This document shows positions 62,821 through 64,000 of a stretch of 64,000 bases of DNA, piece after piece. The position numbers and the translations under genes were made by a program. Within the stretch, counting starts at the first letter, position 1, and every line of letters begins with the position of its first letter. The stretch spans positions 1 to 64,000 of IMG/VR virus record IMGVR_UViG_3300042261_001312. One strand, written 5' to 3'. The notes below the pieces were generated by a model that did no database searches, had not been told where the DNA came from, and saw nothing but the letters and a program-made list of their open reading frames with translations.

Positions 62821-62892
62821 TTGCCCTGCGTGGATTCGAACCACGACTCTAAGATTCAAAATCTCATATGCTAGCCGTTACATAACAGGGCA
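62821..62892 (-). tRNA. tRNA-Gln(TTG)
   Basis: TGAGA-TTTTGAA-TCTTA; U1:A72. Confidence 0.85.
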
Positions 62893-62895
62893 GTG

Positions 62896-62979
62896 CAATC
62901 CCCACAGGACTCGAACCTGTAAACCCCGAAGGGTATCTGTTTCAAAGACAGATGTGTTTCCCAATTCCACCAGAGGACT
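62896..62979 (-). tRNA. tRNA with Gln(TTG) anticodon on a class II (long-arm) body
   Basis: TCTGT-CTTTGAA-ACAGA; extra arm ACCC-TTCG-GGGT; G73. Confidence 0.78.
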
Positions 62980-62982
62980 ATT

Positions 62983-63056
62983 TGGTTGTCTCACCAAGAT
63001 TCGAACTTGGAACATATGTTTCAGAGACATGCGTGTTACCATTACACCATGAGACA
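62983..63056 (-). tRNA. tRNA-Gln(CTG)
   Basis: CATGT-CTCTGAA-ACATA; CCA encoded. Confidence 0.88.
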
Positions 63057-63058
63057 AT

Positions 63059-63820
63059 TTAAAATGCTTCTTCTAAACTAATTAATAATCTTTGCATATC
63101 TGCTTTATAGAATCCAGCACTATTAGTACAACCACATTCAACAATTTTGTATTTGTCATCAGTTAAGCAGACATCCATTACGAATGTGTCATTAAGTTCA
63201 AATAATTTCACCATCTTTTTAACGAAAGTGTGTGCAGATTCATCAACAATATCGCTTGTGCAATATCTACCACCCAAACTATATTGACTTGCTGTTGCAA
63301 TTTTACCTTTAACAATCCAAAATCTAATTTCTTTCTGAATTTTCTTAACAGATGAAATTTGAATTAAAGTGTCTTCATTTAAAATAGTTGAGTGACCATT
63401 GGTCATACATTCTTCTTTAAATTCATGCCATTCATCCATATTGAATACACGTCCAGTGAAAACTTTTGTGTCTTCAGTTGGTCTTGCAAAGAAATCATTA
63501 GTTCTATTGAATTTATCACCAAACCTAACAATTTCAGAATCATAGTTCAATAGATTATCTTTATAATATTTGCTATAAATCTGATAATCATGGTTTTCAG
63601 ATAGTTGTGAACCGGGTATCCAACCGTATTGTTTTGATATTCTCGACATTTTAACTGCACCAAATGGAAATACATCTTTCCTTTTAGTTTTAAATTTAAA
63701 TGTTTCAACAAATGGTTTTATTTTAACGATTTCATATGACAATTTTAATCTTTTTAATGAAGATATTAGATTATCATAATTTTCTTCCCTGAACACATTT
63801 TCTTGAACAACATAATACAT
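63059..63820 (-). CDS. ATP-grasp domain protein (R2K/DUF4343 family)
   Basis: FARPTEDTKVFTG, EIRFWIV.G, FVMDVC, IVECG..N.AGFY. Confidence 0.8.
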   Translation of the reverse strand: MYYVVQENVFREENYDNLISSLKRLKLSYEIVKIKPFVETFKFKTKRKDVFPFGAVKMSRISKQYGWIPGSQLSENHDYQIYSKYYKDNLLNYDSEIVRFGDKFNRTNDFFARPTEDTKVFTGRVFNMDEWHEFKEECMTNGHSTILNEDTLIQISSVKKIQKEIRFWIVKGKIATASQYSLGGRYCTSDIVDESAHTFVKKMVKLFELNDTFVMDVCLTDDKYKIVECGCTNSAGFYKADMQRLLISLEEAF

Positions 63821-63837
63821 GACAATAATTATTAATT

Positions 63838-63912
63838 TGGGGTGTACGGAGGGAGTCGAACCCTCTTCTTTTGATTCACAGTCAAACACATCACCGAAAT
63901 GCTTCAAACACC
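63838..63912 (-). tRNA. tRNA-His(GTG)
   Basis: G-1:C73, TTTGA-CTGTGAA-TCAAA, CCA encoded. Confidence 0.85.
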
Positions 63913-63922
63913 ATATAAAAAG

Positions 63923-63943
63923 TCTAGGTGGTGAGATTCGAAA
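63923..63943 (-). other. Isolated 3' end of a tRNA (T-loop half and acceptor strand), interrupted
   Basis: TTCGAATCTCACCACCTAGACT with unrelated AT-rich sequence 5' of the T-loop. Confidence 0.5.
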
Positions 63944-64000
63944 ATAAATTTTCGAGTATTTATTATTATGAAACCACGCTATACAATAGATGAATTTAAT

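What the first reader, a model, noticed from the sequence alone, without database searches (positions are those of the whole stretch)
62821..64000. Prediction: a fourth Pro/His/Gln-rich leader lies just beyond the window
The last cluster holds Gln x3, His and an interrupted tRNA end. Pro, His and Gln are the only amino acids not covered by clusters A-C. No leader is visible inside the window.
Basis: inference. Interest (0 to 1): 0.7.

Follow-up and report, generated by a model that had tools for sequence, protein, structure and literature searches.

The report
Leader-peptide attenuator before phage tRNA genes
A huge freshwater phage places a tiny Pro/Gln/His-rich reading frame and a transcription stop signal ahead of its Pro, His and Gln tRNA genes, as predicted, which suggests the phage makes each group of tRNAs only when the cell runs short of them.

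Summary
The prediction holds. The window is bases 1-64000 of a 327,676-bp phage contig. Two tRNA-Pro genes lie at 64712-64885 (minus strand). Upstream of them are a Bacteroidetes-type promoter (65387-65357), a 24-codon ORF (65330-65256) containing the run PQPQQHP, and an intrinsic terminator (65227-65199).

An 8-nt segment inside the end of the ORF (GAATGGGG) pairs with the 5' arm of the terminator. The Pro/Gln codons can pair with that segment in turn. This is the classic 1:2 / 2:3 / 3:4 attenuator layout.

With leaders A-C, the four leaders split the tRNA set by amino acid, and each leader is enriched for the amino acids of its own cluster.

Relatives have different tRNA groupings, and their leaders change to match. 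This was seen in 15 distinct D-type sequences, three complete IMG/VR genomes, and two distant phages of 635 kb and 462 kb. The correct leader-to-cluster assignment ranks 1 of 5040 permutations in the 635-kb phage.

- The TGTAAC-N17-CGTA motif lies after the terminator in this cluster, not before the leader.
- The "interrupted tRNA end" is a palindrome.

No transcript data or experiment exists. No prior description was found in the paper library searched.

The parts
64000..64000 (-). POINTER to the parts that lie beyond the window's end. This form accepts only positions 1-64000. The window is contig positions 1-64000, so the numbering simply continues; locus L001 position = contig position minus 62000. 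All parts are on the minus strand:
- promoter TTTG-N19-TATATTTG, 65387-65357
- leader D ORF (24 codons, MKNLVNIVPQPQQHPNNVEWGNYC), 65330-65256
- regulatory codons 9-15 (PQPQQHP), 65306-65286
- region 1, 65300-65289
- region 2 (GAATGGGG), 65276-65269
- region 3 (CCCCATTC), 65224-65217
- region 4 (GATTGGGG), 65212-65205
- terminator with T6 run, 65227-65199
- TGTAAC-N17-CGTA copy, 65188-65162
- 232-nt tRNA-shaped RNA, 65131-64900
- tRNA-Pro(UGG), 64885-64812
- tRNA-Pro(UGG, 92 nt), 64803-64712
   Evidence: - Coordinates.
- tRNAs.
- ORF.
- Promoter pattern.
- Terminator and antiterminator energies.
- Conservation and pair counts.
- TGTAAC motif.
- 232-nt RNA.
63968..64000 (+). Start of a homing/HNH-endonuclease-like ORF (229 aa; it runs to contig position 64657). 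It lies on the opposite strand, inserted between tRNA-Pro and tRNA-His.
   Evidence: PHROG 559 (E 8e-11) and PHROG 3339, and zf-FCS. It is absent from the cluster in G002.
63938..63955 (.). An 18-nt palindrome.
   Evidence: No tRNA is called there.
63838..63911 (-). tRNA-His (GUG)
63059..63820 (-). An ATP-grasp (R2K clade) protein gene inside the tRNA cluster.
   Evidence: Pfam PF14243, E 4e-20. It is conserved inside the same cluster in G002 and G005.
62820..63056 (-). tRNA-Gln (CUG), tRNA-Gln (UUG, 85 nt) and tRNA-Gln (UUG).
58825..59037 (-). Attenuator C:
- host-type promoter, 59037-59007
- leader ORF, 58969-58883 (V, L, D, A, E, W-rich)
- terminator
- then the tRNAs D, E, V, L x4, A, W (58779-56184)
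46610..46815 (-). Attenuator B:
- host-type promoter, 46815-46785
- leader ORF, 46762-46673 (K/Y-rich)
- terminator
- then the tRNAs K, Y, K (46604-46331)
   Evidence: The leader family in about 25 relatives is listed.
38820..39083 (-). Attenuator A:
- host-type promoter, 39083-39053
- leader ORF, 39014-38895 (26 consecutive residues drawn from I, S, T, F, R, N, G, C)
- terminator
- then the tRNAs C, I, S, F, G, N, T, R (38808-34360)
   Evidence: Relatives are listed.

Best explanation
The element at 65387-65199 (minus strand) is a ribosome-mediated, leader-peptide transcription attenuator. It gates transcription of the phage's Pro/His/Gln tRNA cluster. It is the fourth of four such units that together cover the phage's main tRNA array.

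Proposed mechanism:
1. Host RNA polymerase starts at a Bacteroidetes-type promoter, and a ribosome translates the 24-codon leader.
2. If Pro-, Gln- or His-tRNA is scarce, the ribosome stalls on codons 9-15. Region 2 (GAATGGGG) lies just outside the stalled ribosome's footprint, so it pairs with the 5' arm of the terminator (CCCCATTC). The terminator cannot form, and polymerase reads on into the tRNA genes.
3. If decoding is fast, the ribosome runs to the stop codon and covers region 2. The terminator hairpin forms and transcription ends at the T-run.
4. Without translation, the regulatory codons (region 1) pair with region 2, and the terminator also forms.

The result would be negative feedback: each tRNA group is made when the cell's capacity to read its codons falls.

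Shown from sequence: the parts, their order, the pairing potentials, their conservation, and the co-variation of leader content with tRNA content.

Inferred: that stalling occurs, that termination is regulated, and that the signal sensed is tRNA supply rather than amino-acid supply.
For: Leader-to-cluster match:
- Each of the four leaders is enriched for exactly the amino acids of its own downstream tRNAs. In-set residues are A 33/38 (run of 26, P<=7e-9), B 9/28, C 19/27 (run of 13, P<=6e-6) and D 7/23 (run of 7, P<=3e-7).
- The correct assignment ranks 1 of 24 permutations.

Co-variation in relatives with other tRNA groupings:
- LR745206.1 (635 kb) has seven leaders. Examples: a leader rich in H, K, F, S, W before H, F, W, K tRNAs; SKSSSRSSS before R, S; YESYYEE before E, Y; PQPQDQDP before P, D; QQIQQQQ before Q x3. 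The correct assignment ranks 1 of 5040.
- LR756500.1 (462 kb) has leaders matching H,E,V,W; N,D,R; and A,L,P,Y,Q,G,T.
- L052 and L059 match as well.

Leader D itself:
- The leader family precedes P/H/Q tRNAs in 15 distinct sequences.

RNA pairings:
- The antiterminator duplex is -13.4 kcal/mol for D, with 0/500 shuffles as good.
- Over 17 diverse attenuators, cognate region-2/terminator-arm duplexes average -10.7 kcal/mol against -6.6 for non-cognate arms (P=2e-7). In 16 of the 17, region 2 ends inside the last 28 nt of the ORF.
- Both the 2:3 and 3:4 helices are at least 97% paired in 15 D-type sequences. There is compensatory change in 1 pair and 4 pairs respectively. The 2:3 change also alters the peptide from W to R, so the RNA pairing is conserved rather than the peptide.
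- Region 2 begins exactly 12 nt after the last regulatory codon in A, B and D.

Host context:
- The host-type promoter is almost exclusive to the leaders within the window.
- Leader-peptide attenuation and SD-less initiation are reported for Flavobacterium (PMC9723704).
Against: - There is no transcript, 3'-end or ribosome data. No RNA run was listed as holding the locus.
- With the full RNA and no kinetics, the terminator fold is thermodynamically favoured in most modelled ribosome states. The model therefore depends on co-transcriptional folding.
- Within the D family, regions 2-4 are nearly invariant. Covariation there rests on single sequences (L163, G004).
- Leader B's enrichment is modest (P about 0.01 over the whole peptide).
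- Codon choice is not tuned to isoacceptors beyond what amino-acid content gives: 27 of 28 tRNA species are sampled against 24.5 expected, P=0.05.
- In this genome a second promoter-like motif and a 232-nt RNA lie between the terminator and tRNA-Pro. Part of the transcription could therefore bypass the attenuator.
- The opposite-strand endonuclease gene lies between tRNA-Pro and tRNA-His, so control of His and Gln from this leader needs about 0.9 kb of read-through.
- Host and phage are uncultured.
Confidence: 0.8

Rival explanations
1. It is the same attenuator hardware, but it senses amino-acid starvation or general translation speed rather than tRNA abundance. tRNA output would then follow the host's nutritional state and would not be self-regulating.
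For: A stalled ribosome cannot distinguish scarce tRNA from uncharged tRNA. All classical leader-peptide attenuators report charging (established knowledge of trp, his, leu and thr; see also PMC9723704).
Against: - Making more tRNA does not relieve amino-acid shortage, so the tight, co-varying match between leader codons and the downstream tRNA identities would have no obvious selective reason.
- The split into many small codon-specific units in LR745206.1 fits feedback on supply better.
Confidence: 0.12
2. The terminator only ends a short independent transcript that encodes a micro-peptide or acts as a small RNA. The tRNA genes would be transcribed from other promoters, such as the TGTAAC motif at 65188.
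For: A TGTAAC-N17-CGTA copy lies just after the terminator in this genome, and also in L149 and L155. tRNA-Arg at 10015 and the CUA tRNA at 33976 have such a motif directly upstream and no leader.
Against: - In G001, G002, G004, L163 and most relatives the first tRNA (or, in L163, the 232-nt RNA) follows the terminator within about 20-50 nt, with no second promoter motif.
- Clusters A, B and C show none between terminator and tRNA.
- This reading does not explain why peptide composition tracks tRNA content, or why region 2 is complementary to the terminator arm.
Confidence: 0.05
3. Chance: short ORFs and terminators happen to lie before tRNA clusters in an A/T-rich genome.
For: Short ORFs are abundant in a genome of 31% G+C.
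Against: - Run probabilities range from 3e-7 to 7e-9.
- The correct assignment ranks first in all six genomes tested, including 1 of 5040.
- The architecture is conserved in dozens of contigs.
Confidence: 0.01

Closest known systems
Leader-peptide attenuators of amino-acid biosynthesis operons (trpL, hisL, leuL, thrL, pheL; the multivalent ilv leader)
   Same: - The layout is promoter, short ORF with a run of regulatory codons, then an intrinsic terminator.
- An alternative antiterminator has its 5' strand at the end of the ORF.
- A 1:2 pairing involves the regulatory codons.
- Several amino acids are sensed by one leader, as in ilv and thr.
   Different: - The regulated genes are tRNAs, not enzymes.
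- The element is phage-encoded.
- Up to eight amino acids are sensed by one leader.
- The whole tRNA set is split among several leaders.
- There is no sequence or Rfam match to any leader family.
pheST (pheM) attenuator of E. coli, a Phe-codon leader controlling phenylalanyl-tRNA synthetase (from my own knowledge)
   Same: A gene of the translation apparatus is controlled by how well its own codons are read.
   Different: It controls a synthetase, a single amino acid, and a cellular gene.
T-box riboswitches
   Same: The regulatory logic is similar: tRNA status decides between terminator and antiterminator ahead of translation-related genes.
   Different: T-boxes bind tRNA directly and need no ribosome or ORF. 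No T-box match was found. T-boxes are typical of Firmicutes, not Bacteroidetes.
tRNA gene arrays of large phages (T4-like, jumbo and 'huge' phages; PMC7162821)
   Same: Large tRNA complements are clustered on one strand, interspersed with homing endonuclease genes.
   Different: In the papers searched, no regulation of these arrays by leader peptides is described. PMC7162821 contains none of the words leader, attenuat- or terminator.

Membership tests
Ribosome-mediated (leader-peptide) transcription attenuator | A short translatable ORF between the promoter and the regulated genes | tested here: met
   The 24-codon ORF lies at 65330-65256, 26 nt after a TTTG-N19-TAnnTTTG promoter. Its start and frame are conserved in 15 sequences.
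Ribosome-mediated (leader-peptide) transcription attenuator | A run of codons cognate to what is regulated | tested here: met
   PQPQQHP lies before P, P, H, Q, Q, Q tRNAs with P<=3e-7. Permutation tests are, and co-variation in relatives.
Ribosome-mediated (leader-peptide) transcription attenuator | An intrinsic terminator between the leader and the regulated genes | tested here: met
   A hairpin of -13.5 kcal/mol plus T6 lies at 65227-65199. The simple scan does not list it.
Ribosome-mediated (leader-peptide) transcription attenuator | A mutually exclusive antiterminator whose formation depends on ribosome position | tested here: met
   The region 2:3 duplex is -13.4 kcal/mol, and it is the best fold of the RNA left free by a ribosome stalled at codon 15 before region 4 is made. 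It is 99% paired across relatives, and cognate arms beat non-cognate arms. Only the pairing potential is shown, not its use.
Ribosome-mediated (leader-peptide) transcription attenuator | Read-through that responds to the supply of charged cognate tRNA | not testable with these tools
   No RNA run was listed as holding the locus. Host and phage are uncultured.
Rfam leader families (Trp_leader, His_leader, Leu_leader, Thr_leader and others) | A match to the family's covariance model | tested here: not met
   There are no such hits at E<=1 on 62500-66000, or at gathering score on the whole window.
T-box riboswitch | A match to the T-box covariance model (specifier loop, T-box sequence) | tested here: not met
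   No hit.
TGTAAC-N17-CGTATAAT phage promoter-like motif | The full consensus, including the TATAAT-like end | tested here: inconclusive
   The copy at 65188-65162 has TGTAAC and CGTA at the right spacing but ends AAGTT. Of the 56 copies, 52 have T after CGTA.

The most novel reading that the evidence does not exclude
Huge Bacteroidetes phages run their tRNA supply as a set of codon-specific, self-correcting circuits. Each tRNA sub-array is gated by a leader peptide that samples the very codons its tRNAs read. The phage therefore measures the infected cell's decoding capacity amino acid by amino acid, and tops up only what is short. Shortage could arise from host shut-off, from codon-usage mismatch, or from tRNA-cleaving host defences. 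This would be the first case of leader-peptide attenuation controlling tRNA genes, and a new principle for how viral tRNA arrays are organised.
Probability: 0.6. Interest if true: 0.9.

Novelty: new variant of a known kind. Interest (0 to 1): 0.85.

Why it matters
Why large phages carry tRNA genes, and how they control them, is an open question. This finding offers a concrete, testable mechanism, for three reasons:

- The grouping of tRNA genes into sub-arrays is not arbitrary. Each group shares one sensor made of its own codons.
- It extends a textbook mechanism, leader-peptide attenuation, to a new class of target (tRNA genes) and to viruses.
- It gives compact natural parts (about 190 nt) that report decoding capacity for chosen codons. 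These could be used as sensors of tRNA supply.

Tried and rejected
- Isoacceptor-level tuning of leader codons. All but one tRNA species (Arg-CCU; the CUA tRNA is set apart) have a cognate codon in their leader. Synonymous resampling shows this is about what amino-acid content gives (P=0.05), so I make no claim beyond the amino-acid level.
- 'Interrupted tRNA' at 63920-63960. ARAGORN with introns, Rfam, and blast against relatives found no tRNA remnant.
- Identity of the 232-nt RNA. It has no Rfam hit, no tmRNA or intron-tRNA call, and no paralogue in four genomes. The only homologue found is in L163. It remains unexplained.
- Equilibrium folding with ribosome masks. The terminator usually wins. 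Only the co-transcriptional view, before region 4 is made, gives the antiterminator.
- Covariation within the D family is thin, because the helices are nearly invariant.
- Transcript evidence. None was listed. One RNA contig touches only 38 nt of a tRNA.
- GenBank phages. There is no match to leader A by tblastn or to the D attenuator by blastn.
- Another genetic code. Reading TAG or TGA as sense hardly changes coding coverage, so table 11 was kept.
- Literature. Five searches for a description of leader peptides before tRNA genes, plus one reading of the huge-phage paper, found none. That library is incomplete, so this is not proof of novelty.

Full report
**Context.** The window is positions 1-64000 of a single 327,676-bp virus contig with 31% G+C. 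I therefore use contig numbering for positions beyond 64000. DNA contigs from lake and freshwater metagenomes of two studies span 63800-66000 with no differences. Those runs may be the source of this assembly. The ribonucleotide reductase in the window is closest to uncultured 'huge' phages: LR745206.1 (635 kb, 65% identity), LR756500.1 (462 kb, 57%) and many IMG/VR contigs. The >634-kb genomes of that study were assigned to Bacteroidetes hosts (PMC7162821).

**The observation.** ARAGORN and Rfam confirm three tRNA-Gln genes and one tRNA-His at 62820-63911 on the minus strand. The window carries tRNAs for every amino acid except Pro, His and Gln outside this last cluster. The 'interrupted tRNA end' is not supported. 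No tool calls a tRNA fragment there, and the T-loop-like letters belong to an 18-nt palindrome at 63938-63955. The motif TGTAAC-N17-CGTA is real, with 56 copies at spacing 17 and 0-1 at other spacings. When aligned, the copies read TGTAAC-N17-CGTATAAT.

**What lies beyond the window.** Two tRNA-Pro(UGG) genes lie at 64712-64803 and 64812-64885. Reading the minus strand from 65387 down, the elements are:
- a Bacteroidetes-type promoter, TTTG-N19-TATATTTG (65387-65357)
- an A/T-rich 5' UTR of about 26 nt
- a 24-codon ORF at 65330-65256, whose codons 9-15 spell PQPQQHP
- a 28-nt spacer
- a hairpin, CCCCATTC-GAAA-GATTGGGG, followed by T6 (65227-65199)
- a TGTAAC-N17-CGTA copy (65188-65162)
- a 232-nt structured RNA (65131-64900)
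- the two tRNA-Pro genes

**Match between leaders and tRNAs.** I took background amino-acid frequencies from 238 long ORFs of the same contig. On that basis, seven consecutive P/H/Q residues have P <= 3e-7. Leader A has 26 consecutive residues from its cluster's eight amino acids (P <= 7e-9). Leader C has a run of 13 (P <= 6e-6). Leader B has 9 K/Y residues in 28. In the 4x4 matrix of leaders against clusters, only the diagonal is positive (z = 5.3, 2.8, 4.7, 4.1), and the correct assignment is the best of 24. Every tRNA species of the four clusters except Arg-CCU has a cognate codon in its own leader; the CUA tRNA is counted separately. Synonymous resampling shows that this coverage is not significantly more than amino-acid content gives (P = 0.05). 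I therefore claim the match at the amino-acid level only.

**Attenuator anatomy.** In all four leaders, a segment inside the 3' end of the ORF copies the terminator's 3' arm and can pair with its 5' arm:

| Leader | Region 2 | Terminator 5' arm |
|---|---|---|
| A | CGGGTTTT | AAAACCCG |
| B | GAATCGGG | CCCGATTC |
| C | GTCGGGT | ACCCGAC |
| D | GAATGGGG | CCCCATTC |

- For A, B and D the duplexes are -11 to -13 kcal/mol, and at most 0.2% of shuffles are as good.
- In A, B and D the segment begins exactly 12 nt after the first base of the last regulatory codon. That is just beyond the footprint of a ribosome stalled there.
- When the RNA behind such a ribosome is folded before the terminator's 3' arm exists, the antiterminator is the best fold at -16 to -22 kcal/mol.
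- In free RNA the regulatory codons pair with region 2 instead. In D this is CCCCAACAGCAT with ATGTTGAATGGGG.
- This is the classical four-region arrangement. At equilibrium with the full RNA the terminator usually wins, so the switch must be kinetic, as in known attenuators.

**Conservation and co-variation.** The D leader family precedes P/H/Q tRNA clusters in three complete IMG/VR relatives and, in all, in 15 distinct sequences.
- The invariant blocks are the start, region 2, region 3, region 4 and the T-run.
- Both helices are at least 97% paired.
- The terminator has four pairs with compensatory change, and 0 of 500 shuffles reach the observed value.
- The antiterminator has one compensatory change, U-A to C-G in L163. 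That change also turns Trp into Arg in the peptide, so the pairing is kept rather than the peptide.
- Over 17 diverse attenuators, the cognate region-2/arm duplex is stronger than non-cognate ones: -10.7 against -6.6 kcal/mol, P = 2e-7.

The strongest evidence comes from relatives whose tRNAs are grouped differently.
- In LR745206.1, Asp sits with Pro and the leader reads PQPQDQDP. His sits with Phe, Trp and Lys, and that leader is rich in H, K, F, S, W. Tyr sits with Glu (YESYYEE). Gln stands alone (QQIQQQQ). Arg and Ser have SKSSSRSSS. The correct assignment is the best of 5040.
- In LR756500.1, leaders match H,E,V,W; N,D,R; and A,L,P,Y,Q,G,T.
- L052 and L059 behave the same way.
- An apparent exception in L052 was resolved. 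A K/Y-rich leader seemed to lack a K or Y tRNA, but Rfam found a tRNA with anticodon GUA that ARAGORN had missed.

**Promoters.** TTTG-N19-TAnnTTTG occurs four times in the window, and three of these sit before leaders A, B and C. The fourth leader has one too. This is the sigma-A consensus of Bacteroidetes. In that phylum Shine-Dalgarno sequences are lacking, and leader-peptide attenuation has been inferred for amino-acid operons in Flavobacterium (PMC9723704).

The TGTAAC motif is a separate, phage-wide class.
- In A and C it overlaps the host-type promoter.
- In B it lies just upstream of it.
- In D it lies after the terminator and lacks the TATAAT-like end.
- Relatives G001, G002, G004 and L163 have no such motif there. 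L149 and L155 do, and in L155 it precedes an inserted HNH gene.
- I read the D copy as part of an insertion that may give an attenuator-independent route into the tRNA genes. This weakens, but does not remove, control by the leader in this particular genome.

**Interpretation.** The best explanation is ribosome-mediated attenuation in which slow decoding of the leader's codons opens transcription of the tRNAs that read them. This would be a negative feedback on tRNA supply. The parts and their pairing potentials are shown. The stalling, the regulated termination and the nature of the signal are inferred. An Rnl1-type RNA ligase gene lies next to the Lys/Tyr cluster, which is compatible with contested tRNA pools. 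That link is speculation.

**Known relatives and novelty.** The mechanism class is textbook (trp, his, leu, thr, ilv, pheST leaders). The element matches none of the Rfam leader families or the T-box. I found no paper that describes leader peptides ahead of tRNA genes, in phages or cells. The library is incomplete, so this is absence of evidence only. I rate it a new variant of a known kind, of high interest.

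Noticed in passing
contig 64900-65131 (minus) = L001:2900-3131; L163:4061-4292: A 232-nt tRNA-shaped RNA lies between the D terminator and tRNA-Pro. 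It has a 7-bp acceptor-like stem, a T-arm-like hairpin with loop TTAAAGT, and about 150 nt of extra helices in place of an anticodon loop. It has no Rfam, tmRNA or intron-tRNA call. An 89%-identical copy sits at the same place in one other IMG/VR contig, there without the TGTAAC motif.
   Followed up: partly
whole contig; e.g. window 825-10444 and contig 263742-327498: The motif TGTAAC-N17-CGTATAAT has 56 copies and is concentrated near both contig ends. It looks like a phage-specific promoter class, distinct from the host-type TTTG/TAnnTTTG promoter. Several copies (4586, 327498, 5831, 5945, 320824) are followed by G+C-rich, non-coding-looking stretches. Those at 4586 and 327498 resemble each other.
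   Followed up: partly
window 33976-34047 (minus), motif at 34086: A tRNA with anticodon CUA (amber suppressor; ARAGORN labels it 'Pyl') ends the array. It has its own TGTAAC motif and no leader. The same tRNA ends the arrays of G001, G002 and G004, and one is present in LR756500.1. Reading TAG as sense adds only 1% coding coverage, so there is no sign of recoding here.
   Followed up: partly
contig 64712-64803; window 62895-62979, 37694-37779, 37790-37861, 46435-46520: There are several odd tRNAs. tRNA-Pro is 92 nt with a long, mostly unpaired variable region. tRNA-Gln is 85 nt and tRNA-Asn is 86 nt, both with extra arms. A 'tRNA-Cys' with anticodon ACA does not reach Rfam's gathering score. 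Neither does the ARAGORN tRNA-Tyr at 46435-46520.
   Followed up: no
contig 63968-64657 (+); window 36211-36969 (-); L155 after the D terminator: Homing/HNH-endonuclease-like genes are inserted inside or beside the tRNA clusters. One of them lies on the opposite strand between tRNA-Pro and tRNA-His.
   Followed up: partly
window 47707-48798 (-), 46844-47671 (-), 63059-63820 (-): A T4 Rnl1-type RNA ligase gene and a papain-like peptidase gene lie directly upstream of the Lys/Tyr leader. An R2K ATP-grasp gene (63059-63820) is conserved inside the P/H/Q cluster in G002 and G005.
   Followed up: no
window 10098-10124 and 10418-10444 (minus): Two identical 27-nt copies of the TGTAAC motif lie 320 nt apart. 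The second sits 10 nt before a lone tRNA-Arg(UCU) at 10015-10087, which has no leader.
   Followed up: no
L163:3825-3855: In L163 the D-type leader's host-type promoter does overlap a TGTAAC-N17-CGTA motif, as at leaders A and C of this genome.
   Followed up: no
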